In this document: positions 16,597 through 63,614 of the stretch, piece after piece | How positions within the stretch are numbered: position 1 is the first letter of the stretch | How the letters are laid out: each line of letters begins with the position of its first letter | Assembly (NCBI GenBank): GCA_001179505.1 | Contig: CDMY01000218.1 | Coordinates: 100,985-164,984, forward strand | Source: Vitrella brassicaformis CCMP3155 | Taxonomy: Eukaryota > Protista > Chromerida | Direction: 5' to 3' | Length of the DNA stretch: 64,000 nt | Translations under genes and position numbers: made by a program | The notes under the pieces: model-generated | Seen by the model: only the letters and a program-made list of their open reading frames with translations | Databases searched by the model: none | Told to the model about the DNA's origin: nothing

Positions 16597-19500
16597 ATGC
16601 ATCATTTCCCTAGATTCGAAGATAGAAGGCCGGTCATCATGTCCGACACACCGTTCCGTGACGGTCACAGTGACGCCGCCGAAGACGGCATGCGTCCGCA
16701 CCCTCCCGCCCCTCCCGCACACCCCTCTGCGGCCGCATCGCTCCTCCTGGGCCGTCTGGCGGGTCAGGGCGGCTTTCCGGCGTCACTTATGGGTCAGTTG
16801 CCGTTGGGCTTCGGTCGGGTGCCGAGACGCTTCGTAGAGTATGATGACGCAATGGAGAAGTGGCTGGCTGTGGAGGAGGGAGGTGAGGGAGGCAGTGAGG
16901 GAGGCAGTGAGGGATGCAGCTAAGGGGGAAGGAAATGGCAAGGAGCGACTCGTTCATATATGGTGTCTGTTGTGTGTGTCTGTGTGTGTGTGTGTTGTTT
17001 GGCATGCAGGTGTGCCGTACGTTCGCAGCGCGAAGCCATTCGCTGACAGTCAATATGGCGGCAAGGAGCAGGTAAAGCATGGAAGAGAAAAACGATAAGA
17101 GTCACATTGTCTGTCCACCCCTCTCTGTTTGCATTCCTGTGGCTGACGGATGGCTGCATTGCATTGCGCTGCATTGACAGGCGAAGGAGGCGGCCATCGC
17201 GTATTTGAAGCAGCTGCCCGCCCCTTCGCGTTTCATGTACCGCCCTCCCGCCGCCTACCACCACGCCAGTCATTTCCCCTACCATCACGCCCACCACCAC
17301 CACCCCGCCATGTCGTCGAGTGTGAAGCAGCGCGTCATGACGGTGTCAGTGCCCACTGAGCTCGAGCTCAGGGCTGCGTTGGCTGACGGCAGAGTCGGAT
17401 ACGATCACAGGAAGGTCAGCAGGCCAAGTCAGACAGGGGGAGAAGGGTGTGAGTGGGTCGGATGGACGTCATGGTGTTGTTTGCCTATGGCGTTTCACCC
17501 ATTTGCAGAAGTTGGTAGTTGGGACTTTGTTTCACGAAGGAGCACCCGTGCTTAGACAGTGGTTCGCCCCCGGCCAATACCGTAAGCAAGCCAAGAAGAA
17601 ACGCCGAAACCCACACATGCAGCCGGAATGAGAAGCTTCGGATCACACCTTCCTCTGTCGTATTTCTTTGCCTCAGGTAACTTCGTCGCGGCGCAGCTGC
17701 GGGCTCTCATGTGGGTCAACGAGCAAGAGCAGCTACTGCAGCGGCCCCGCTCCACCCACAGACAGCGACGCCAGGCCAGCACCCCGCCCCAGCAGACCGA
17801 GACACAAGAGTCGCACGAGGACAGGGAGGCCGCGTCGCTGCATGCCGTCATCGAGGCCAAGAGGCGGGTGCAGGAGATCCGCAAGAAGAAGGCCGACGCG
17901 ACGGTTCCCAGGGTGGATGTGGACCTCACCCTGACCAACGGGCATGACGCCGGTGTGCATGGCTACATCAGCAAGAAAGACGAGGAGCTGATGGACCTCC
18001 TCGACGAAGCCGACAGCCGGCAGCAGCACCAGCAGCAGCAGCAGCAGCAGCGTGAGCGTGAGCGTCCCCCCCGTCCGTACTCGTATGTGCCCCCCACCAA
18101 CCCCACACCCTTCCCACGGCGGCCGCTGCAGTTCCGCCCGTTCAGCTTCGTCCGCCACCCCAACAGCGGCGTGCCGATGCCCTTCAACGCCCCGTCACTC
18201 GTGCAGCGCTTCCACTACCCCTTCAGTCCTCTCATGCCCATGAGTGACACAGGCGGCCGCAGACAGCAGCAGTCGACCAGGGGGCGCAAGGGCTCCTCTC
18301 CCCTCACCCCATCCCCCCCACCCACACCCACACCCCGTAGACACAAGAAATCCCACAACGACACAATCGACGACAGCGGGGTCGTCAGGCGCCAGACGCA
18401 CGAGAGGAAGAGACGGAGCGCGGGGGCCAAGGCACCACATCAGCGCGGGAAGGTCGCCCTTAAGGGGCAGCCCCCGCACCCTCACACACATCGCTGCTAC
18501 CGCACCGCCCGCTTTAGCAACCCCTGCGGCCGCGCATTCCTCCGCTTTCTCGGGCCCCCCACCGGCACGCGACCGGACGACGGTGAGAAGGACGGCGTGC
18601 GCGCCAAGGATGAGGGCGAGATGTGCAAGGAGATGACGGACGAGGTGCTGGCTGAGCTGCTGCTCTCTCTGCGCAAGGGCGGCTTCTACCAGCGTGCAGA
18701 CAAGACAGAGGAGGGGGCGGAGGGGGCGGAGGGGGCGGAGGGGGCGGAGGGGGCGGAGGGGGGNNNNNNNNNNNNNNNNNNNNNNNNNNNNNNNNNNNNN
18801 NNNNNNNNNNNNNNNNNNNNNNNNNNNNNNNNNNNNNNNNNNNNNNNNNNNNNNNNNNNNNNNNNNNNNNNNNNNNNNNNNNNNNNNNNNNNNNNNNNNN
18901 NNNNNNNNNNNNNNNNNNNNNNNNNNNNNNNNNNNNNNNNNNNNNNNNNNNNNNNNNNNNNNNNNNNNNNNNNNNNNNNNNNNNNNNNNNNNNNNNNNNN
19001 NNNNNNNNNNNNNNNNNNNNNNNNNNNNNNNNNNNNNNNNNNNNNNNNNNNNNNNNNNNNNNNGGCGGAGGGGGCGGAGGGGGCGGAGGGGGCGGAGGGG
19101 GCGGAGGGGGGGGAGGGAGAGGGCAAGCGAGACGGGAGTGGCAATGACGACGACCACCAGAACGATGGCGACCGGCCCAAGGACGGCGGCCCGCAGCACT
19201 CGGCTCACCACCAGGAGACACCCAAGTGCGGCCACGCCCATCCGCCACCCACGCGGCCGGCCGATCAGCAGCAGGGCAGCACACCCACCAGCACCACAAC
19301 GCAACAGCCCCACCAGCACGCTCCTACTCCCGTGATCCCCCTGAGCCATCTCACGACTCTTCCCCTCCCATCCTTCGACACACATGGCCGACCCAAGCGC
19401 AAGCGGGACAACATAATGGTCTGCCACGCTGGACGGATTGGCGACCCCTTCCCGCCACAGCACACACCCATGGTCGCTCTCCCGCCCTTGATGCAGCCAC

Positions 19501-49083: not shown

Positions 49084-52000
49084 ACAATTAGAATACACCG
49101 CGAGAGACGAAAAGGATACTATATCAATCGAACAGCGAACGTTTGCGTGCTGCGTCCGCGAGGTGGAGACAGCAAGCTTTGGCCATTTCACGTCCAGACC
49201 AGCTTCGAAGCGGCCGGTGTTCAGAAGATGCCTTTTGCCCCTGATGACGTACAGGGGTTCCTGAGGGCTGAGACGGCTTTTGCTGTCACCCGCTGAAGGC
49301 GGGTCAACTTTTGTCTGGTTTCTTTCCAGTTCCCTCAAAAAGGCTTTGTTTGCCAATGTCCCTTCCGTCTCTTCCGTCTCTTCTGTCTCTTCTGTCTCTC
49401 ATACATTTCTCTTCGTTTCTCTTGATTGAGAAGAGTGGGAAGAGTGGGAGACTGCAGAGCAAAAGCGGCGAATATAGAAAAAAAAAGTCAAACAAACAGC
49501 TGCCAGTGCGTGTGTGTGAGTGTGTGTCCCTGTGTGTGTGTGTATGCAGGTGTGTGGCCACAACTTGCCCGTGGGACATCTTATCATCCCCACGTCCATC
49601 AGAGATCCCAGCTTCCAGGTTCCGCCTCCCGTTCTTCTTCATGATTGACAGACAGGGACACACACACTCACGTAGACAGACAGACACAGGGCGAGAGAGG
49701 AGAGAGGGAGGGGGACAGATCTGCTGACAGCGTTAGATAGCTGACCAGCGGGACACACACATGGGGGACACACAGAGTTTTATTGGTCATTTTGGGGTGT
49801 GTGCGTGTGTGTGCGTGTGTGATTTGGGTAATCCCATCGGCTGTCTGTGTGTGGCTGGGCATGCGTGTTGTGTGTCGGTGGATGGATTGCCTGTCTGGCA
49901 TGTGTGGTGGTGGCCGCGCATGTCCATGTCCATGGCCCGGCTGCAGCGTTGCATTCACATACCCATGGATGGATGGATGGATGGACCATTTTCGTTGCTT
50001 TACACCATCAAGCGAAGCGCACCACGGACAGGTTGACGTACATGCAGAGTTGGGCCTCTTAGACACACACACACACACGCACACGCACACACCACACACA
50101 TACATGTTCACCCAACCCGCCCAACCCCACACCCGTCCCTTACATCCGTTCTTGTCCAAGCGCGATGACACGCCTCACGTCAGCAACTGGCCTGCCTTGT
50201 TAAGCATCCACATCATGACGGGCTGTTTGCCCACCAATGATAGTTCAGGACCACAGAAATGCAAACAACACTGTCTGCGTACCGAAATCTAGCCGGCATC
50301 AAATCCGAAAAGGTCATCAAAAATGCCATCATCGAATCGGGCTCAAAGTAGTCATCTAAAGCGCCTGGATCGGGTCGTGGACCGGGCTCCGCAGGAGCGG
50401 GCACTAGTGGCTGCCGTGCCGTCGGGGCCGGGGAAGAGATCGGACGATGTGGCTACGGGACTGACGCACACCTCACCCAGGGGATACCCTGAACCCACCA
50501 ACCATACCGACACCTCCTGAACACGGCCACACACACAGAGACAGATGGGAAAAGGGGATGGGGTTGGCTAGCTAGTTGGCTGACCACGTCTGCGTCTTGA
50601 TCAGTGACTGGGAAGATGGCGATGGGCAGCTCCTCATCGATTAGCGGCACGATGGCTAAATCCTCATCCACGTTGGGATCGTCATCGCTCTCAGTCGCTC
50701 TCAGCATCGCTGCCGCCCACAATGAAGCTGCATTCGTGTGTGCATGACCCGACGCACAATCAAATGAGTCTCGCGCTATCCGCTAGCCCCGGCCCGACTN
50801 NNNNNNNNNNNNNNNNNNNNNNNNNNNNNNNNNNNNNNNNNNNNNNNNNNNNNNNNNNNNNNNNNNNNNNNNNNNNNNNNNNNNNNNNNNNNNNNNNNNN
50901 NNNNNNNNNNNNNNNNNNNNNNNNNNNNNNNNNNNNNNNNNNNNNNNNNNNNNNNNNNNNNNNNNNNNNNNNNNNNNNNNNNNNNNNNNNNNNNNNNNNN
51001 NNNNNNNNNNNNNNNNNNNNNNNNNNNNNNNNNNNNNNNNNNNNNNNNNNNNNNNNNNNNNNNNNNNNNNNNNNNNNNNNNNNNNNNNNNNNNNNNNNNC
51101 GTACATGCAGAGTTGGGCCTCTTAGACACACACACACACACGCACACGCACACACCACACACATACATGTTCACCCAACCCGCCCAACCCCACACCCGTC
51201 CCTTACATCCGTTCTTGTCCAAGCGCGATGACACGCCTCACGTCAGCAACTGGCCTGCCTTGTTAAGCATCCACATCATGACGGGCTGTTTGCCCACCAA
51301 TGATAGTTCAGGACCACAGAAATGCAAACAACACTGTCTGCGTACCGAAATCTAGCCGGCATCAAATCCGAAAAGGTCATCAAAAATGCCATCATCGAAT
51401 CGGGCTCAAAGTAGTCATCTAAAGCGCCTGGATCGGGTCGTGGACCGGGCTCCGCAGGAGCGGGCACTAGTGGCTGCCGTGCCGTCGGGGCCGGGGAAGA
51501 GATCGGACGATGTGGCTACGGGACTGACGCACACCTCACCCAGGGGATACCCTGAACCCACCAACCATACCGACACCTCCTGAACACGGCCACACACACA
51601 GAGACAGATGGGAAAAGGGGATGGGGTTGGCTAGCTAGTTGGCTGACCACGTCTGCGTCTTGATCAGTGACTGGGAAGATGGCGATGGGCAGCTCCTCAT
51701 CGATTAGCGGCACGATGGCTAAATCCTCATCCACGTTGGGATCGTCATCGCTCTCAGTCGCTCTCAGCATCGCTGCCGCCCACAATGAAGCTGCATTCGT
51801 GTGTGCATGACCCGACGCACAATCAAATGAGTCTCGCGCTATCCGCTAGCCCCGGCCCGACTGCTGCTCTTCCTTCTTACTCATCGATGAAATCAGCGTC
51901 GCCTGTAGACTGCTAGCAGCGACAACAATAGCCCCAGCGCGCTCTGCACCAACCAGCATGCAGACGTCCAACCAGTGACTGACCAGTGAAGGACAATTCG

Positions 52001-54943: not shown

Positions 54944-56586
54944 TATGTGTGTGCGCACCGCACCTCCAGGAAGCTGGTATACATGAGATCGACGAGTGAT
55001 ATGTCGTCGCCGAGGAAGTAGGGGCCGTCGTCGAACTGATCGAGCGCCTTGTCCACACTACACACACACACACACACATGGCAGGCAGCCGTGTAAGTTC
55101 GCCGTCTCACGACTGACTGACTCCCGGGTGCGCTGCGCACCTGTCCATCGTCTGCACAAATTGCGCCTTCATTCGGTCGCTCGGACCACTACCTGCCGCA
55201 GACACACACCACACCCAATCACACACATCAAGAAGCGTACGTATCTCATATATTGGACACTCACTTGTGAGCCAGCCCAGCCATGCGCTGAACAGCTGAC
55301 GCTCCAGCCGCAGCAACGGACCCACTGACACACAGACACACGCACGGGCGCACGCACACATATTGGAAAAGAAAGTCGATACGAATCCTGTGTGAGCACA
55401 CACACCTGCGCTTGATTTCTCTGTGCCCGGTTTGGGCAGCAGGGGCTTGTGGTCGGGGAAGCGCTCCTCAATCGCCTGCATGATGTCGTTGGACTCGGTG
55501 ATGACTTGGCCGTCGATCTTGCACACGGGCAACATCCCTGTGTCCGCACACATAATGCGCGCAGGCTCGCGCACGCAAAGTGCTTCTCCCTGCGTACCTC
55601 CTGGACAGATGTCCAAGAACCATCGTGGCTTGGCGCCGTAGCACCTGACGACCCAGCACATGATGATCAGAGTGCCTACACCACACCGCTGACCCGCACC
55701 TGAGAGGCACTTTCTCCACCCTGTAAGGGATCTGCTTCTCCTCCAATTGCAGCCACACCTGAATCACCCCATCAATCCATCCACGCACACGTGCGCATCG
55801 CATGCACCCCCTGCTCATCTGTGTGTTCTATGTTGGTATGTGTTGAGCGACCTTTTCGCAATAAGGGCACCATGCGGCCGAGTCCCTGTAGAGCGTCACG
55901 CGATCGGCCGCCTTCTCGTCGGTCGAGTCGAACAGGCGGATGGACGCCCACGGGGTCGGGTAGGGACCTAAACGAACACACACACACGCACCCATATGCA
56001 CACATCTCGCTCACACACTGACTGCGTCATTCATCATCACCTCTGCCCTGGTCCCTCATCGCGTTGAAGGCTCTCTCTTCCTGTGTCAACATTGACGACA
56101 ACTCAGCCCATGAGGGAGCCCTTCACACGACACGACACAACACAGCAGACAGACATTCCCATCTGTGTCTGTGTGTTCTCTCCATGGGTGTGTACTGTAC
56201 CGGTCATTCTGCAGTGTGGGCGCGTTCGGTGCGCTCTTGCCGAACAGGAGGGAGGAGACCGCCTGCATCGGGCTGCTGCTCGACAGGGAGGTGCGCTGCC
56301 CTGGCAAACCCCAAACAGACAAACAGACAGGCAAACATGCGCATCTATGACTGCACGTCATTTTGGCTCCTCAGACAACATGCACAGATTGGCATGAAAC
56401 ACACACAATGAACACACATGGACAGACACACTGTGCGCCTGTCTGTGTGTCTGTCTGCCTGCGGTGCACAGCCCGTCCCGTACCTCTGGTAGATCCGATC
56501 TGCTTGGTGCAGGTGTATGTGTAGCCGCACACACCCAGGAACAGCAGGGGCGACGAAAGCAATGCCGCGCGCCGGATAAAGAGCAT
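53709..56586 (-). CDS. Glutathione S-transferase-like protein with CPYC motif (algal/cyanobacterial type), probable bipartite plastid leader
   Basis: Spliced [140 protein letters not shown]. Leader MLFIRRAALLSSPLLFLGVCG joins in phase to GQRTSLSSSSP. Confidence 0.88.
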
Positions 56587-56625
56587 TGGAGAGGCTCCCA
56601 CGGGTGCGAGCTCAGAAGTGAAGCA

Positions 56626-59600
56626 ATGGTCCCAAGCAGTCAGCAAATGCGAAGGAGCCGGGAGCACATGGAGAAGAGCGGACTCACTGCGTTGACAGTT
56701 CGAAGAGATAGAGCAGCGTATGACATGGAGGTGCGTATGACATTGTACGTGTGTGTGGTTTGCTTGTGTCACTCACGCCGTCTGCTGTGTGTGCTTGTGT
56801 GTTTATGCTTGTGCTTGTGCTTGTGTGTGTGCAGGACGACGATGTGTACATGGAGCGGTCCGAATCTGCTCCAACCGGTCGGAATGGTGGCGCTTCATGG
56901 AGAGTCTGGAGGTCAGTCAGCCATACAGCGCAGCAGAATTCATATGCACCTTGTACGCTCTTGTGTGTGTGTGTGTGTGGTTTCGTCAGGCCTGTGTATC
57001 GGTGTGTGATTGGGTGTATTGGCTTGTTGGGTTTGGGCCTTAGCGTATACCTCACAGTCGGTCATTACAGGCACGTCGGCTGTCTGTCATCAACACGTGC
57101 AGTGCGGTGCTGTGCGACCGCCATGCTCTCTCTCTTTGTGTGTGTGTGTGTGCAGGGAAGAAGAGGGCTCATCATGTCCCACAGGGGGATGTAACACAGT
57201 GACGACAGGTAGGTAGGTATGTGTGTGTGGATGAACACTCACACCGACTGTGTGTGTACGGGACGGCGGGGGATGCATGTCTGTCTGTCTGTCCCATCCA
57301 CGACGCGAACACACACAGGTCCCTACTCCCACATCATGTCTGTGCCCCTGTCTTCCCTCGGCGCGCTGGCGTACCTCGTCGTCATTGCGCTCTCACTCGG
57401 GGCATTCCCATGTGTGCCGACGGTAGGCGCCCAGGTGCTCGCGGGGGTGTGTGCGTTACGATCTCTGCATGTGGATGCGCGCGTGTGTGTGTGTGTGTGT
57501 GGTTTGGTTTCAGGTGTGGCGCGTTCCTCCGAAGAAGGATGTCAACATGACTGGGTGAGTGGTCATGGTATGCATCATCTGCGGTGCACGCCCTGCATGG
57601 TCTATACTCGCTGCTCATGCAGCCCTGTGCGTCACCATGTGTACCGCAGGACGGGCGACACCAACGGCAGCGACAGCCGGGCAGAGAGGGTCAACAGGGT
57701 GCTCCTGCTGGTCGTCATCGCCAGCATGGCCACCTTCTCGTACGCAATACAAAACAACCGAGCGTACGCGATAGGGCGTCTGCGTCTTTGTGTGATCAGT
57801 TCGTATCTGATGCTTCTCATGTATGGGGTCATTCACGAAATTTGCCCCTGGTGATGCAATGCAGCAGACAGACGTGTGTGTGTGACTGAACAAACGAAAC
57901 GTGCCGTTTGTGTGTGTGGCTGTGCGTGTGGTGTGTGTGCAGGTGCCTCACTTCGGCCGTTTGCTGCTTTTCGATGTTCGTGATTGCGGTGTGCACGAGA
58001 CTGGTGCCGCAGTACACAAAGGTAGGGAGGAAGGGAGGGACGCGCACACAGACCTACCTACCTACCTACACAGCGCATGCACATACACGTCCTTGTGTGT
58101 GCGACAGATGGTGACGATTGTGCTGTCGACAATGCTGGTCATCGCCTTGGGCGCCTGGGGCGTCTACCAGGTCTGTCTCACAGACAGACAGACGAACGAG
58201 AATGCACGTCACGTCTATGTGTGTGTGCAGGTCCAGAGGCACCAGGAGAGGGTCGCTCTGGGCCTGCATGGGCCGTCGACCGACGACGCAATGGCGCTGG
58301 CTGAACACCTGAGAGACGAGGGTACGCACACGCATTGACACACAAGACTGGATCGATGGACATCTGTGTGTGTGTGTGTGTGTGAAGGGGTGACGATGTA
58401 CGGCAGCCACTACTGTGGCCATTGCCTGGAACAGAAGGAGGAGTTTGGCAAGGACGCCTTCAAGGTCATCGACTACGTCGAATGCGCGCCGGGTACTTCA
58501 CTGACTACTTGCCCTGCCCTGCCCACACATAGAGACAGACCTGCGTTGGCACATTTCGTTGCTGAATTGTGTGGCGTCTGCAGACCAAAAGGACAGCCAA
58601 AGCAAGAAGTGCCAGGACAAAGGAGTAAGCGGACAACAAACACAAACACGTGTGTCATGCCTCCACCACGTACGTGTCTCTACCTCTCTCTCAGCTGACG
58701 GGCCTCCCCGCGTGGGAAATCGACGGCAAGATCTTATACGGCGACAGATCCCTCTCAGAGGTGTGCTCACACTTCCACACACGGCATAGCATACACACGT
58801 CTGTCTGCACAACTCACTCTCACCTCCCTTTGTCTCGCCCTTCAACAGCTGGCCCGGCTGACAAAGTTCATCCTGCCCTCTCAACGAGCTGGGCAGATAC
58901 AGCAGCAGCGGGATGAAAAGCCTGCTGCTGCTGCTGCTCCTGCTGCTGCTGCTCCTGCTGCTGATGCCCCCGCTGCCGCCGCCCCTGCTGCACCAGTATC
59001 TCCTGCACAGGCAGAGAGACAAAACCAGGGAGGCCTGTGGGCGGGGGAGCTCATGGACAGAAAGGGGCTTGCAGAGAGGTGAGCAAAGGTGGGTGGATGG
59101 CTGTGATTTGACGGCGGTGATGTGATGTGATCTGGTGTGTGTGTGTGTGTGTGTGTGTAGGGTGGCCCTGCAGCTGGCGTCGATAGGCAGCGTGATGTAT
59201 GGCTCCAACCACTGCGGGCACTGCAAAGACCAAAAGAAGGTGCGCACGTGTGTGTCCGCGTCGTTTCCTGTGGATGGATGGATGGATGGATGGCTGGATG
59301 TGTTTGTGGTTGTTTGCGCCTGTCAGGACTTCGGCGAGTCGTTCGAGCACCTCTCGAGGAACGGTGGGTGGGTGGAGTGCAGCACGATGATCAGAGGCCA
59401 CAATGCCAGCCTCTGCAAGAAGAAACAGGTAACACACCAGTGAGGGGCGTGGCTGGTGCACGGACCTGCTGTTCCACACACAGGTGCGTGTACTCATGCG
59501 GGTCTGTCGCCGTGTGTGTGTGTGTGCGGACAGATTCAGTCGTATCCCACGTGGGAGATTTTCGGCAAGTTCTTCAGGGGAAGAAAACCCATGCAGCAGC

Positions 59601-60648
59601 TGGCGACACTCGGTAGGTAGTACCCACCCCGTGCGCCCGCTGTCCATGTGTGTGTTTTTTTTTGTGCGTGTCAGCCGGTCTGGAAACGATCGACGAGCTG
59701 AGAGAAAGAGGTGACGTGACATACAGACCACACACAGCAGCACACACAGAGCGCGGCTGTGCATTCCTCTCGGTGNNNNNNNNNNNNNNNNNNNNNNNNN
59801 NNNNNNNNNNNNNNNNNNNNNNNNNNNNNNNNNNNNNNNNNNNNNNNNNNNNNNNNNNNNNNNNNNNNNNNNNNNNNNNNNNNNNNNNNNNNNNNNNNNN
59901 NNNNNNNNNNNNNNNNNNNNNNNNNNNNNNNNNNNNNNNNNNNNNNNNNNNNNNNNNNNNNNNNNNNNNNNNNNNNNNNNNNNNNNNNNNNNNNNNNNNN
60001 NNNNNNNNNNNNNNNNNNNNNNNNNNNNNNNNNNNNNNNNNNNNNNNNNNNNNNNNNNNNNNNNNNNNNNNNNNNGTGTGTGTGTGTGTGTGTGTGTCCA
60101 CGTGCAGGTGTGACGCTCTACACCTCATCGGACGCCTCGTGCGAGCCATGCGCCGAGCAGAAAAAGATGCTGGGGACGGCCGGTGCGCAATCCAATCCAA
60201 TGCACTCTCTGCAGCTGTCAACCGCATGAATTCTTGTGGTGAGTTGTGTGCAGGCAACGAGGCGATCCACATAATTGAGTGCCCACCATCCAGCCGCAGC
60301 AATGGTGATGACGACAGTGTTGCGGTTGCTGCTGCGGGCGACAAGAGTGGGCCACTAGATAGGAAGAAGCAAAGGCGGCGGCTGCAGCAACACGACGAAC
60401 CTGACGAGCCAGATGACGATCCATGTGTAAAGGTATGGCTGACTCACAGACATAAACAGAGAGCCGTCAGCAGAGAGAGCTGTAGCGCATGTCATGTGTG
60501 GGTGTGTTTGCCCATACTGCAGGTGTCTGGCCACAGCCTGCCCGTGTGGGAATTCCCATTAACCCCTGTGGCCTCATCCGAGCCTCGGCTGCTGGACGGT
60601 CCTCTTTCACTTGAGCAGCTGCAGAAACACCTGAGTGACACTGACTAA
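56626..60648 (+). CDS. VKOR domain fused to three thioredoxin-like domains (LTO1-like)
   Basis: VKOR: SCPTGGCNTVTTGPYSHIMSVPLSSLGALAY and ICPWCLTSA. Trx1: MYGSHYCGHCLEQKEEFG..YVEC..C..LPAWEIDG. Trx2: MYGSNHCGHCKDQKKDFG..WVEC..C..YPTWEIFG. Trx3: LYTSSDASCEPCAEQKKMLG..IIEC..PC..LPVWEF..GPLSLEQL. Start codon uncertain. Confidence 0.85.
59776..60075. other. Assembly gap (300 N); other gaps at 18764-19063, 50800-51099 and 62353-62391
   Basis: Runs of n in the sequence. Confidence 0.99.
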
Positions 60649-61831
60649 TGGGGAGAGAGAGCTCTCTCCTCGCGCGTCTTTTTCGTTCGTTCCGTCCTTG
60701 TTCACATTATGATGTATAGGCGGATGGGATGCGTGCAGGCATGTGTGTCTTTTGGTGGCTCTTTTTCCCTCGAGGCTCTGTTTATCTATCGGTGTGGCAG
60801 AGGGTGTGGTGTACATCCTTCCATGTGTGTGCAGCGCTGCGGGCTGGTGTGGTGAGCAGAGGCCGCCACACCGCACATTTTGCCCTCCTCCTTCCTTCGT
60901 GTCTTGTACAGCCAACCAATCGTGATGCGTGTCGTGCGTGAATGTGTTGTGTCATTTGCTCGCTCGTGAGTCAATCAGTCAGCGGAATGAAGCGAGCGAT
61001 GTACAGGAAGGACAGTACACGAGACAGACGCGAGTACGCCTTTGATCTGACAAAAGAAGTGAGTCCATGCGCATCGCATACGTAAGTGCATGTTTGTGTG
61101 AGGGCACATGAGCAGTGCACGCCCCCTCCCACCCTGTTTGCCTGCCTGCCTCCCTCCCTCTCTGCACACACAGCCCACCCCTGCGCACATCCGTGTGTGG
61201 GAAGGTGCCTGCCCGCGTGCTGCGCACTCCTGCACAACCGCATTCACGAAATTCGCAAAGCCTACGCGTAACTAGGGTTTGGCTGAGCACATCAGCCGCC
61301 TCTCCGCCCCCCTGCAATGGGAAAAAGCCTCCCAGAAGAGAGTGTTTACAGTTGCGAGCTTGAGTGGTGCTAGGGGTCGCTAACGGCACATGCCCTCTCC
61401 GCAAACACAACAGCACCAGAGAGGCTCACACACAGAAAGGCCACACACGAAGCGAGAAGCAGCCACAAGGCCCCCCAGCTGACATTTCCCTCTGTCTGTC
61501 TGCCTGTCTGCTCAGGAAAAGGGTGATCTATCTCAAGGAATCGGCCATGCCGTCAAGGGCCCTAGCAAGGCTTTTCTGACCTCTTGATGAAGGTGCGATT
61601 CTGAGCTGGAGAGGCCTATATGTTCTTTACTTCGTCATTCTTCGGGTGGGATACCTTTTCAACAACTTCGGTTTCTTCTCATGACCCGCACACACAACCT
61701 CATTCCCTCTCCTTGGTAAGGCCTCATAGCCCATAGTCACATTATCTTGCACACACGCCCTCAGCTTCTCGCCTGCACCTTTTTTCTGTAGGCGTCTTTC
61801 TCTCACTGAGTGCCGCCCCCAGTCTGCATGT

Positions 61832-62459
61832 GTGTGTGTGCGTCGTCTCCTGTGGATGGATGGCTGGATGGCTGGATGTGTTTGTGGTTGTTTGCGCCTG
61901 TCAGGACTTCGGCGAGTCGTTCGAGCACCTCTCGAGGAACGGTGGGTGGGTGGAGTGCAGCACGATGATCAGAGGCCACAATGCCAGCCTCTGCAAGAAG
62001 AAACAGGTAACACACCAGTGAGGGGCGTGGCTGGTGCACGGACCTGCTGTTCCACACACAGGTGCGTGTACTCATGCGGGTCTGTCGCCGTGTGTGTGTG
62101 TGTGCGGACAGATTCAGTCGTATCCCACGTGGGAGATTTTCGGCAAGTTCTTCAGGGGAAGAAAACCCATGCAGCAGCTGGCGACACTCGGTAGGTAGTA
62201 CCCACCCCGTGCGCCCGCTGTCCATGTGTGTGTTTTTTTTTGTGCGTGTCAGCCGGTCTGGAAACGATCGACGAGCTGAGAGAAAGAGGTGACGTGACAT
62301 ACAGACCACACACAGCAGCACACACAGAGCGCGGCTGTGCATTCCTCTCGGTNNNNNNNNNNNNNNNNNNNNNNNNNNNNNNNNNNNNNNNGAAAGAGGT
62401 GACGTGACATACAGACCACACACAGCAGCACACACAGAGCGCGGCTGTGCATTCCTCTC

Positions 62460-62492
<33 letters not shown>

Positions 62493-63488
62493 ACGTGCAG
62501 GTGTGACGCTCTACACCTCATCGGACGCCTCGTGCGAGCCATGCGCCCAGCAGAAAAAGATGCTGGGGACGGCCGGTGCGCAATCCAATCCAATGCACTC
62601 TCTGCAGCTGTCAACCGCATGAATTCTTGTGGTGAGTTGTGTGCAGGCAACGAGGCGATCCACATAATTGAGTGCCCACCATCCAGCCGCAGCAATGGTG
62701 ATGACGACAGTGTTGCGGCTGCTGCTGCTGCTGCTGCTGCGGGCGACAAGAGTGGGCCACTAGATAGGAAGAAGCAAAGGCGGCGGCTGCAGCAACACGA
62801 CGAACCTGACGAGCCAGATGACGATCCATGTGTAAAGGTATGGCTGACTCACAGACATAAACAGAGAGCCGTCAGCAGAGAGGGCTGTAGCGCATGTCAT
62901 GTGTGGGTGTGTTTGCCCATACTGCAGGTGTCTGGCCACAGCCTGCCCGTGTGGGAATTCCCATTAACCCCTGTGGCCTCATCCGAGCCTCGGCTGCTGG
63001 ACGGTCCTCTTTCACTTGAGCAGCTGCAGAAACACCTGAGTGACACTGACTAATGGGGAGAGAGAGCTCTCTCCTCGCGCGTCTTTTTCGTTCGTTCCGT
63101 CCTTGTTCACATTATGATGTATAGGCGGATGGGATGCGTGCAGGCATGTGTGTCTTTTGGTGGCTCTTTTTCCCTCGAGGCTCTGTTTATCTATCGGTGT
63201 GGCAGAGGGTGTGGTGTGGTGTACATCCTTTCATGTGTGTGCAGCGCAGCGCAGCAGGTGTGGCGGCCGGCCTCGGCTCGCACATTTTGCCTTCCTCCTT
63301 CCTTCGTGCCTTGTACAGCCAACCAATCGTGAAGCGTGCCGTGCGTGAATGTGTTGTGTCATTTGCTCGCTTGTGAGTCAATCAGTCAGCGGAATGAAGC
63401 GAGCGATGTACAGGAAGGACAGTACACGACACAGACACGTGTACGCCTTTGATCTGACAAAAGAAGTGAGTCCATACGCATCGCATAT
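61832..63488 (+). pseudogene. Partial duplicate of the 3' exons and 3' flank of the VKOR-Trx gene (copy of about 59249-61081)
   Basis: Same exons with a few substitutions (CEPCAEQ to CEPCAQQ, longer Ala run). Frames and splice sites intact; lacks the VKOR, Trx1 and Trx2 CGHC exons. Confidence 0.75.
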
Positions 63489-63614
63489 GTCTGTCAATGT
63501 GCCCCGGCCGCTTTATCCGCAAGGCAGCCACAAGCAAGCAATCCCCATCCATCCATCCATCCATAGCAACCAGCATACATCAGAGCCTTGGCCGCGCGAC
63601 AGCAAGGCAGACAT

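What the first reader, a model, noticed from the sequence alone, without database searches (positions are those of the whole stretch)
56626..60648. VKOR fused to three thioredoxin-like domains (CGHC, CGHC, CEPC) with no obvious plastid leader
Seen: VKOR loop cysteines (CPTGGC), active-site CPWC and three repeats of the LTO1-type Trx unit, each keeping all four Cys. Trx3 emerges only after splicing (ELRER|GVTLYTSSDASCEPC..MLGTA|GNEAIHIIEC) and carries a long acidic/basic insert. Known: plant LTO1 and cyanobacterial VKOR fusions have one Trx-like domain, and CGHC is the classic PDI motif. The predicted N-terminus (MVPSSQQMRRS..DDDVYME) is hydrophilic, not a signal peptide. Inference: a multi-Trx disulfide relay, possibly retargeted from the thylakoid to the ER or periplastid system, acting like a membrane-bound PDI with its own quinone oxidant.
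Basis: partly seen in the sequence, partly recalled or inferred. Interest (0 to 1): 0.72.

Follow-up and report, generated by a model that had tools for sequence, protein, structure and literature searches.

The report
VKOR enzyme with three thioredoxin-like domains
This is a real, expressed gene of the alga Vitrella brassicaformis in which a membrane quinone-reducing enzyme (VKOR) carries three disulfide-exchange domains instead of the usual one. The layout is unusual, and the protein is already in public databases under a generic name.

Summary
Window 56626-60648 (+) holds a 22-exon gene for a 650-aa protein. It has a hydrophilic N-terminus, a 4-helix VKOR core (CPTGGC loop, CPWC), a fifth helix, and three VKOR-type thioredoxin-like units (CGHC, CGHC, CEPC).

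The N gap lies inside intron 19 and hides nothing. A second genomic copy reads through it, and transcript contigs join exon 19 directly to exon 20, in frame. Two full-length transcript contigs match all 22 exons.

The organism is Vitrella brassicaformis CCMP3155. The protein is public (CEL94418.1 / A0A0G4EG13, "VKOR domain-containing protein").

All three units belong to the VKOR-associated Trx family, not to PDI, and they share intron positions, which points to intragenic duplication.

All 78 VKOR-type Trx reading frames recovered from 80 prokaryotic loci, 69 of them VKOR-Trx fusions, carry one unit. Two reviews describe the fusion as bimodular. My search of eukaryotes was weak. It found only separate two-unit soluble proteins in marine picoeukaryotes.

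No signal peptide or upstream exon is seen, so retargeting to the ER or periplastid space stays plausible but untested. The family-invariant VKOR serine is glycine here.

Verdict: a new variant of a known kind, of moderate interest. The scan had not noted it before on other DNA.

The parts
56626..60648 (+). Whole coding region of the VKOR-3xTrx gene: 22 exons, 650 aa from Met1, 643 aa from Met8 (= CEL94418.1).
   Evidence: Gene model. Transcript contigs L001/L002 match all exons. P0002 is identical from Met8.
56626..56911 (+). Exons 1-2: hydrophilic N-terminal extension (about 54-61 aa) with no hydrophobic stretch. In-frame ATGs lie at 56626, 56647 and 56668.
   Evidence: Hydropathy. Transcript contigs start at 56633. 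Predicted disordered, pLDDT 40-50.
56990..58021 (+). Exons 3-9: VKOR core, TM1-TM4. Loop Cys pair CPTGGC at 57175-57192. Active-site CPWC at 57843-57848 plus 57944-57946, split by intron 8.
   Evidence: Pfam PF07884, 84.5 bits, E 9e-24. Aligns to Synechococcus VKOR 4NV2. Cys columns are 26/26 invariant.
57208..57320 (+). Codon for Gly106 (Gly99 of P0002), split by intron 4. This is the position of the family-invariant Ser of the VKOR lumenal half-helix.
   Evidence: 26/26 prokaryotic homologues have Ser here; Vitrella has Gly, with Thr at -1 and -2. The junction is confirmed by RNA.
58108..58170 (+). Exon 10: fifth transmembrane helix, which carries the chain back to the side of the loop cysteines.
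   Evidence: Hydropathy. Aligns with TM5 of cyanobacterial fusions. Helix 218-251 in the AF2 model.
58270..58872 (+). Trx1 (exons 11-15). CGHC at 58414-58425.
   Evidence: E 9e-19 to PDB 3KP8. Up to 53% identical to cyanobacterial units. pLDDT 88-98. TM 0.86 to a cyanobacterial VKOR-Trx cluster over residues 44-354.
58873..59058 (+). Ala/Pro-rich linker of about 60 aa, lying inside exon 15. No splice is therefore needed to join Trx1 to Trx2.
   Evidence: Continuous open frame within one exon. Predicted disordered, pLDDT 35-47.
59059..59688 (+). Trx2 (exons 15-19). CGHC at 59213-59224.
   Evidence: Its best PDB hit is 3KP8. Pfam Thioredoxin scores 23.4 bits, E 6e-5. 35% identical to Trx1, E 1e-18. 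pLDDT about 80-86.
59776..60075 (.). Assembly gap (300 N) inside intron 19 (59711-60107). It most likely replaces a (GT)n run.
   Evidence: Copy 2 reads through at 62392-62510. RNA contigs join exons 19 and 20 directly.
59689..60645 (+). Trx3 (exons 19-22). CEPC at 60140-60151. Structural Cys at 60280-60282 and 60424-60426. Charged insert at 60286-60423 (46 residues between the two Cys; 36 extra columns relative to the other units).
   Evidence: Keeps all invariant family columns. AF2 pLDDT 76.8 with the insert disordered. Best PDB match is 3kp8, E 3.4e-4, TMt 0.69.
61826..63490 (+). Second copy of the segment 59244-61083 (exons 17-22 plus 3' flank). It is a truncated paralogue annotated as CEL94419.1 (P0003), and has its own 39-N gap at 62353-62391.
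   Evidence: (98.3% and 95.6% identity). Its 3'UTR variant is present in transcript contig L001.
56483..56593 (-). First exon of the head-to-head neighbour: a GST-N-domain protein with a signal-peptide-like start, ATG at 56587. It bounds the space available for an upstream VKOR exon.
   Evidence: (X1 record 1 ends at 56593).

Best explanation
This is a quinone-linked disulfide-generating membrane enzyme of the cyanobacterial/plastid VKOR-Trx (DsbAB / LTO1) type. Its thioredoxin-like module has been triplicated by duplication inside the gene.

Shown:
- One mRNA encodes the whole protein.
- There are five transmembrane helices.
- The loop Cys pair, the CPWC site and three Trx units are all present. 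Each unit has CxxC, the second Cys pair and the cis-Pro.
- The VKOR+Trx1 part is colinear with cyanobacterial fusions and superposable on them.

Inferred from the Synechococcus structure and mechanism (PDB 3KP9; established knowledge): electrons pass from substrate thiols to a Trx CxxC, then to the VKOR loop cysteines (C88/C93 of P0002), then to CPWC (C192/C195), and finally to a membrane quinone.

Trx1 is held next to the loop by TM5 and is the fixed entry point. Trx2-Trx3 form a tight tandem on a disordered Ala/Pro tether of about 60 residues. They most likely act as extra, longer-reaching oxidising or isomerising heads, re-oxidised by Trx1 or directly by the loop cysteines. All three units lie on the exoplasmic (lumenal) face.

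The compartment is not resolved. With no signal peptide and no upstream exon in the RNA, I lean slightly (about 55:45) to signal-anchor insertion into the ER or outermost plastid membrane rather than the thylakoid.

The confidence given covers the architecture plus the general relay mechanism. The architecture alone is about 0.97.
For: Gene and mRNA:
- Model.
- Full-length contigs L001/L002.
- Read contigs.
- Public proteins.

VKOR identity:
- Pfam.
- PDB 4NV2, E 7e-28, with aligned Cys.
- Invariant columns 26/26.
- TM 0.86 to a cyanobacterial cluster.

Trx units:
-.
- In the full-length AF2 model all three fold, while the linker and the insert are disordered.

Intragenic duplication:
- A phase-0 intron sits just before the [GS][LY]PxWE motif in all three units.
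- Trx1 and Trx3 share a phase-1 intron in G|VT[ML]Y.
- The tree with the three units held together has a log-likelihood 10.5 higher than the free search, p-AU 0.70.

No leader:
-.
- The Chromera velia VKOR EST was scored 'plastid targeted: No' in PMC3516247.
Against: - No enzymology has been done.
- The family-invariant Ser of the VKOR half-helix is Gly here, so quinone reduction could be impaired or altered.
- CEPC in Trx3 is not seen in any other family member sampled, and Trx3 is very divergent (branch length 8).
- The unit tree is unresolved and prone to long-branch attraction.
- Trx1 and Trx2 are each closer to outside sequences than to each other, so shared introns are the main support for duplication within the gene.
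- The 5' end is defined by assembly contigs, not by RACE.
Confidence: 0.75

Rival explanations
1. It is the thylakoid LTO1 orthologue of Vitrella. It sits in the thylakoid membrane with three lumenal Trx heads and uses phylloquinone, and its targeting information is non-canonical or not yet seen at the 5' end.
For: The gene has cyanobacterial affinity: Trx1 is up to 53% identical to cyanobacterial units, and the nearest clusters are cyanobacteria and Streptophyta. The Chromera VKOR was inferred to be a red-algal endosymbiotic transfer (PMC3516247). LTO1 is needed for photosystem II assembly in plants (PMC4400859 and PMC13452876). No second Vitrella VKOR appeared in the one exhaustive search, though that search was weak.
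Against: Full-length transcript contigs show no signal peptide plus transit peptide. The neighbouring gene and the picoeukaryote two-Trx proteins do show recognisable leaders. At most 40 nt separate this gene's 5' end from the neighbour's.
Confidence: 0.4
2. One reading: the enzyme has been retargeted to the ER or to the outer/periplastid compartments. There it works as a membrane-bound, PDI-like oxidase that carries its own quinone-linked oxidant.
For: The RNA-supported N-terminus has no leader, and VKOR TM1 is the first hydrophobic segment, so it could serve as a signal anchor. The CGHC motifs are of the oxidising type (established knowledge). Mammalian VKOR works in the ER with membrane-anchored Trx-like partners (Schulman et al. 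2010, cited in PMC13486548).
Against: There is no ER retention signal: the C-terminus ends in ...HLSDTD. The units are VKOR-type, not PDI-type. Which quinone would be available outside the plastid is unknown. No localisation data exist.
Confidence: 0.45
3. The three-Trx architecture is an artefact. On this reading, the repeated 3' segment was wrongly attached to a normal one-Trx gene by the genome assembly or the transcript assemblers.
For: The 3' segment is duplicated in the assembly and has about 4x the word depth of the 5' part. L001 mixes copy-1 exons with a copy-2-like 3' end. RNA differs from both assembled copies at three bases.
Against: The Trx1-to-Trx2 junction lies inside a single exon (58849-59078) of single-copy DNA and needs no splice. 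The duplication starts only in intron 16, after the CGHC of Trx2. Independent contigs from two read sets and from a JGI assembly all run exons 15 to 22. Exons 16 and 17 are joined in RNA.
Confidence: 0.03

Closest known systems
Synechococcus sp. VKOR-Trx fusion (PDB 3KP9, 3KP8, 4NV2, 4NV5, 4NV6) and cyanobacterial 'DsbAB' fusions
   Same: Four-helix VKOR core with a loop Cys pair and a CxxC, then TM5, then a C-terminal Trx-like domain with CxxC, a second Cys pair and a cis-Pro. E 7e-28 over TM1 to Trx1. TM 0.86 over residues 44-354.
   Different: The Vitrella protein continues for about 297 residues past Trx1, against 6-22 in 26 prokaryotic fusions, adding a linker and two more Trx units. Its motifs are CGHC, CGHC and CEPC instead of CPHC or CSHC. 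The invariant Ser is Gly. The N-terminal extension is about 54-61 aa longer.
Arabidopsis LTO1 / AtVKOR (thylakoid lumen thiol oxidoreductase 1)
   Same: It is a eukaryotic, nucleus-encoded VKOR-Trx of cyanobacterial type, and the presumed lumenal disulfide catalyst of a phototroph (PMC13452876, PMC4400859).
   Different: LTO1 is bimodular (375 aa, one Trx-like domain) and has a chloroplast transit peptide. The Vitrella protein has three units and no recognisable leader.
Mammalian VKORC1 with membrane-anchored Trx-like partners (TMX, TMX4, ERp18)
   Same: A VKOR core that takes electrons from Trx-fold proteins on the lumenal side of an endomembrane. This is the functional analogue if the Vitrella protein sits in the ER.
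   Different: The partners are separate polypeptides, there is no TM5 and no fusion, and the enzyme has epoxide reductase chemistry tied to gamma-carboxylation. Only VKOR-domain homology links the two.
Protein disulfide isomerase (PDI) family
   Same: Several Trx-fold domains in one chain, and the CGHC active-site motif in two of them.
   Different: The units are not PDI-type. PDI chains score only E 0.2-1.6 against exon 12, while the VKOR Trx domain scores 2e-7. There are no b or b' domains, no signal peptide and no KDEL.
Marine picoeukaryote proteins P0005, P0006 and P0007 (ENA/TARA contigs)
   Same: They carry tandem VKOR-type Trx-like units in one chain and are 42-45% identical to Trx1.
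   Different: They have two units, no VKOR domain, an N-terminal signal/transit-like leader, and CSYC, CGYC or CSFC motifs. Their two units form a clade of their own (support 98), so that duplication was independent.

Membership tests
VKOR family (Pfam PF07884) | Profile match above the curated threshold | tested here: met
   84.5 bits against a cut-off of 27.5, E 9e-24, profile positions 2-133 of 134.
VKOR family (Pfam PF07884) | Four-helix bundle, with the loop Cys pair and a CxxC at the lumenal end of TM4 | tested here: met
   Hydropathy and AF2 helices. C88, C93, C192 and C195 of P0002 fall in columns that are Cys in 26/26 homologues.
VKOR family (Pfam PF07884) | Conserved Ser/Thr six residues after the second loop Cys (human S57; recalled from Goodstadt and Ponting 2004, as summarised in PMC4555120) | tested here: not met
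   The aligned column is Ser in 26/26 prokaryotic homologues and Gly in Vitrella, with Thr at -1 and -2. The RNA confirms the codon.
VKOR family (Pfam PF07884) | Quinone reductase activity | not testable with these tools
   This needs an enzyme assay or E. coli dsbB complementation.
VKOR-Trx fusion (cyanobacterial DsbAB / plant LTO1 type) | TM5 followed by a C-terminal Trx-like domain with CxxC, a second Cys pair and a cis-Pro | tested here: met
   TM 0.86 to a cyanobacterial cluster.
VKOR-Trx fusion (cyanobacterial DsbAB / plant LTO1 type) | Bimodular: exactly one Trx-like domain | tested here: not met
   Three units in one mRNA. All 78 VKOR-type Trx frames recovered from 80 prokaryotic loci have one unit.
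VKOR-Trx fusion (cyanobacterial DsbAB / plant LTO1 type) | Plastid (thylakoid) targeting presequence in eukaryotes | tested here: inconclusive
   There is no hydrophobic segment before VKOR TM1, and the transcript contigs start at 56633. No targeting predictor, RACE or localisation was available.
Protein disulfide isomerase family | PDI-type catalytic Trx domains (PF00085) with CGHC | tested here: inconclusive
   CGHC is present twice. PF00085 reaches 23.4 bits (cut-off 23.5) on Trx2 only. The best matches of all three units are VKOR-type Trx domains.
Protein disulfide isomerase family | Signal peptide, non-catalytic b domains and a C-terminal ER retrieval signal | tested here: not met
   None is present. 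The C-terminus is ...HLSDTD, and the only segments between units are a disordered linker and an insert.

The most novel reading that the evidence does not exclude
A chromerid alga has moved a plastid-derived VKOR-Trx enzyme out of the thylakoid into the ER or outer plastid compartments and triplicated its Trx module. The result is a self-contained, quinone-driven, PDI-like oxidative-folding machine: a route to disulfide formation in a eukaryotic endomembrane that does not depend on Ero1. The loss of the family-invariant serine might mark a change of quinone or of chemistry.
Probability: 0.25. Interest if true: 0.7.

Novelty: new variant of a known kind. Interest (0 to 1): 0.45.

Why it matters
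VKOR-Trx fusions are the textbook minimal disulfide-generating machine, with one oxidase and one carrier in a single chain. A natural version with three carrier domains on a flexible tether offers three things.
- It allows a test of how electrons are passed between Trx heads and the VKOR loop.
- It is a case of domain amplification by exon-set duplication.
- Through its missing leader, it is a handle on where oxidative folding happens in algae with four-membrane plastids, the photosynthetic relatives of apicomplexan parasites.

If it proves to be the ordinary thylakoid enzyme, it is only a lineage-specific elaboration.

Tried and rejected
- **Exon-by-exon Pfam scans.** Apart from exon 5, which hit VKOR at E 5.7e-4, only chance matches to unrelated families (best E 0.0075, all far below their cut-offs) or no hits appeared, because the exons are too short.
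- **The single exhaustive protein search.** I spent it on a stop-free genomic frame holding exons 5, 7 and 8. It returned only the gene's own product. That gave a usable protein id but no survey of relatives.
- **Word searches.** Searches with the whole protein and with residues 40-345 found only the protein itself; the tool scored only the 8000 candidates sharing most words, which I take to have been dominated by low-complexity and membrane-helix words. Absence of relatives is therefore only weakly shown.
- **Metagenome scan.** It gave only bacterial or archaeal single-unit Trx proteins and did not even return the gene itself.
- **First genome scan.** I repeated it with a tighter alignment.
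- **Tree of Trx units.** It was unresolved with very long Vitrella branches. I use only the constraint test from it. The test for Trx1 and Trx2 alone did not finish.
- **Atlas searches.** They found only single-unit relatives.
- **PDI origin of the CGHC units.** Rejected.
- **Hidden exon in the gap.** Rejected.
- **Joined spliced model.** I never typed it into a search tool. Whole-protein steps used the public ids P0001 and P0002 that a tool returned.
Full report
**What is there.** The region is eukaryotic, with short introns rich in (GT)n. I built a 22-exon model on the + strand from 56626 to 60648. All introns are GT-AG except the exon 3 donor, which is GC at 57071. The product is 650 aa and consists of:
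- a hydrophilic N-terminus of about 61 aa;
- five hydrophobic helices (aa 62-85, 110-140, 168-195, 197-222 and 225-247);
- CPTGGC in the first lumenal loop;
- CPWC, split by intron 8;
- three thioredoxin-like units with CGHC, CGHC and CEPC.

**The gap, tested first.** The 300 N at 59776-60075 lie inside intron 19. Three lines of evidence show that nothing is hidden there and that the frame runs on.
- The 3' part of the gene (59244-61083) is present a second time at 61826-63490. In that copy the intron is read without N from 62392 to 62510. It is a short intron ending in a (GT)n run and the acceptor used in my model.
- Transcriptome-like contigs of two public runs cover exon 15 through the 3'UTR. 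Their record arithmetic (333+82+36+75=526) leaves no room for an extra exon between exons 19 and 20.
- Two full-length transcript contigs from a JGI sample (L001 at 2403 nt, L002 at 2401 nt) align to all 22 exons with exactly the modelled borders, and they join 59713 to 60106 directly.

**Identity.** Operators' rules required the spliced model to be searched exon by exon and by reference, so I did that. I joined the exons only inside scripts, for coordinates, hydropathy and internal alignment, and I sent no typed joined sequence to any search tool.

A stop-free genomic frame holding exons 5, 7 and 8 went to the exhaustive protein search, which returned one protein, P0001. Its cluster holds CEL94418.1 / UniRef100_A0A0G4EG13, named 'Vitamin K epoxide reductase domain-containing protein', from Vitrella brassicaformis CCMP3155 (P0002, 643 aa). 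The same cluster holds CEL94419.1 (P0003, 219 aa, 'Thioredoxin domain-containing protein'), which is the truncated second copy. P0002 equals my model from Met8. The protein is therefore already public. What is not annotated, and not described in any paper I could find, is the three-unit architecture.

**VKOR and Trx1.** Several results agree.
- Pfam VKOR scores 84.5 bits.
- The protein aligns to the Synechococcus VKOR-Trx structure (4NV2) from TM1 to the end of Trx1 at E 7e-28.
- An AF2 model built on 26 prokaryotic fusions gives high confidence for the helices and for Trx1.
- Residues 44-354 superpose on a cyanobacterial VKOR-Trx cluster representative at TM 0.86 and 2.8 Å.
- In the 26-homologue alignment, all six catalytic or structural Cys of VKOR and Trx1, the cis-Pro and the Trp are invariant and present.

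There is one exception. The serine six residues after the second loop Cys is Ser in 26/26 homologues but Gly in Vitrella, with Thr at the two preceding positions. That codon spans intron 4, and the RNA confirms it.

**Trx2 and Trx3.** Both are VKOR-type units, not PDI domains.
- For exon 16 of Trx2, the best solved relative is the Trx domain of Synechococcus VKOR. For exon 12 of Trx1, PDI chains score more than a million-fold worse than that domain.
- In a 16-sequence alignment of family units, all three Vitrella units keep all 11 invariant columns.
- Trx3 is divergent. It has two extra residues before the CxxC, a charged insert of 36 extra columns between the two structural Cys, and 8 extra residues after WEF. 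Its AF2 model (pLDDT 76.8, insert disordered) nevertheless matches 3kp8 best.
- In the full-length model Trx2 and Trx3 fold at pLDDT of about 80 without any alignment depth. The Ala/Pro linker (P0002 375-410) and the insert (556-600) are disordered.
- The linker lies wholly inside exon 15, so the Trx1-Trx2 connection needs no splice.

CGHC is one substitution away from the family's CPHC or CSHC, so the motif does not imply PDI ancestry.

**Origin.** All three units have a phase-0 intron just ahead of the [GS][LY]PxWE strand. Trx1 and Trx3 also share a phase-1 intron in the Gly of G|VT[ML]Y. This pattern suggests that sets of exons were copied within the gene.

The unit tree is unresolved and has long branches. 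However, the tree with the three units held together is better than the free search by 10.5 log units, and monophyly is not rejected (p-AU 0.70). The units are old or fast-evolving: Trx1 is 35% identical to Trx2 but 44-52% identical to outside sequences.

**How unusual is it?**
- I recovered a VKOR-type Trx reading frame from 78 of 80 prokaryotic loci, mostly cyanobacterial. All 78 have one unit. Sixty-nine of them also carry the VKOR CxxC; the other nine are short Trx-only frames or frames with an odd motif.
- The 26 aligned fusions end 6-22 residues after the unit, against 297 in Vitrella.
- Reviews from 2015 and 2026 describe the fusion as having one C-terminal Trx-like domain.
- The only multi-unit relatives I found are three marine picoeukaryote proteins. 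They have a leader and two tandem units but no VKOR, and their duplication is independent.

My eukaryote sampling was poor. Rarity among algae is therefore suggested, not shown.

**Targeting.**
- The transcript contigs begin at 56633, 7 nt after the ATG at 56626.
- The in-frame upstream sequence has no other ATG.
- The head-to-head neighbour's transcript ends at 56593.
- Pfam places VKOR TM1 as the first hydrophobic segment.

No bipartite leader is seen, whereas the neighbour begins with an obvious signal peptide. A 2012 study listed the Chromera velia VKOR EST as a red-algal transfer that is not predicted to be plastid-targeted.

A phototroph also needs a thylakoid disulfide catalyst, and I could not check for a second VKOR in the genome. 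I rate ER or outer-plastid insertion at about 0.45 and the thylakoid at about 0.40.

**Mechanism.** By homology with the Synechococcus enzyme, electrons should pass from substrate thiols to a Trx CxxC, then to the loop cysteines, then to CPWC, and finally to a quinone. Trx1 is fixed beside the loop by TM5. Trx2-Trx3 form a tight tandem on a long flexible tether. They probably widen the reach or the range of substrates, and CEPC may serve a more reducing, isomerase-like role. The order of transfer among the units, the identity of the quinone, and the effect of the Ser-to-Gly change are inferences or remain open.

**Verdict.** This is a new variant of a known kind that is already present, under-annotated, in public databases. 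Interest is moderate.

Noticed in passing
window 59244-61083 and 61826-63490: A segmental duplication covers exons 17-22 plus about 435 nt of 3' flank, at 98.3% and 95.6% identity. The word depth of this segment in two DNA runs is about 4x that of the 5' part of the gene, so the genome may hold more copies than the two assembled. Copy 2 is annotated as a separate gene (CEL94419.1). It lacks the CGHC of Trx2 but keeps Trx3, with CEPCAQQKK and a longer Ala run.
   Followed up: partly
L001:1819-2380 against window 62926-63487; L002:1819-2401 against window 60521-61103: The two full-length transcript contigs differ only in the last exon and 3'UTR. L002 matches copy 1 (99.7%). L001 matches copy 2 (99.3%), although its exon 21 is of the copy-1 type. 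Either read-through splices into the second copy, or the assembler made a chimera.
   Followed up: no
window 59409, 59584, 59587: RNA contigs differ from both assembled genomic copies at three bases: G>A, which changes Ser to Asn in GHNA[S/N]LCKKKQ, and two synonymous A>G changes. All three lie in the multi-copy segment, so an unassembled copy may be the one transcribed.
   Followed up: no
window 55100-56593, minus strand: The head-to-head neighbour starts at ATG 56587 with a signal-peptide-like MLFIRRAALLSSPLLFLGVCG. It has a GST N-terminal domain (GST_N_2, E 4.5e-6) with a CPYC motif. Its transcript ends at 56593, at most 40 nt from the start of the VKOR transcript contig, so two thiol-redox genes sit on what looks like a shared bidirectional promoter.
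   Followed up: partly
window 57071: The intron 3 donor is GC rather than GT. Transcript contigs confirm it.
   Followed up: yes
P0005, P0006, P0007; L032:3001-4257: Marine picoeukaryote (TARA/ENA) intronless genes encode proteins with a signal/transit-like leader and two tandem VKOR-type Trx units joined by a poly-Pro linker, with no VKOR domain and no Pfam hit. This looks like an undescribed soluble double-Trx relative of the LTO1 Trx domain.
   Followed up: partly
window 18764-19063, 50800-51099, 62353-62391: There are further assembly gaps. The 39-N gap at 62353-62391 is flanked by identical 72-nt sequences (62282-62353 and 62392-62463), which means an overlap was left unmerged.
   Followed up: partly
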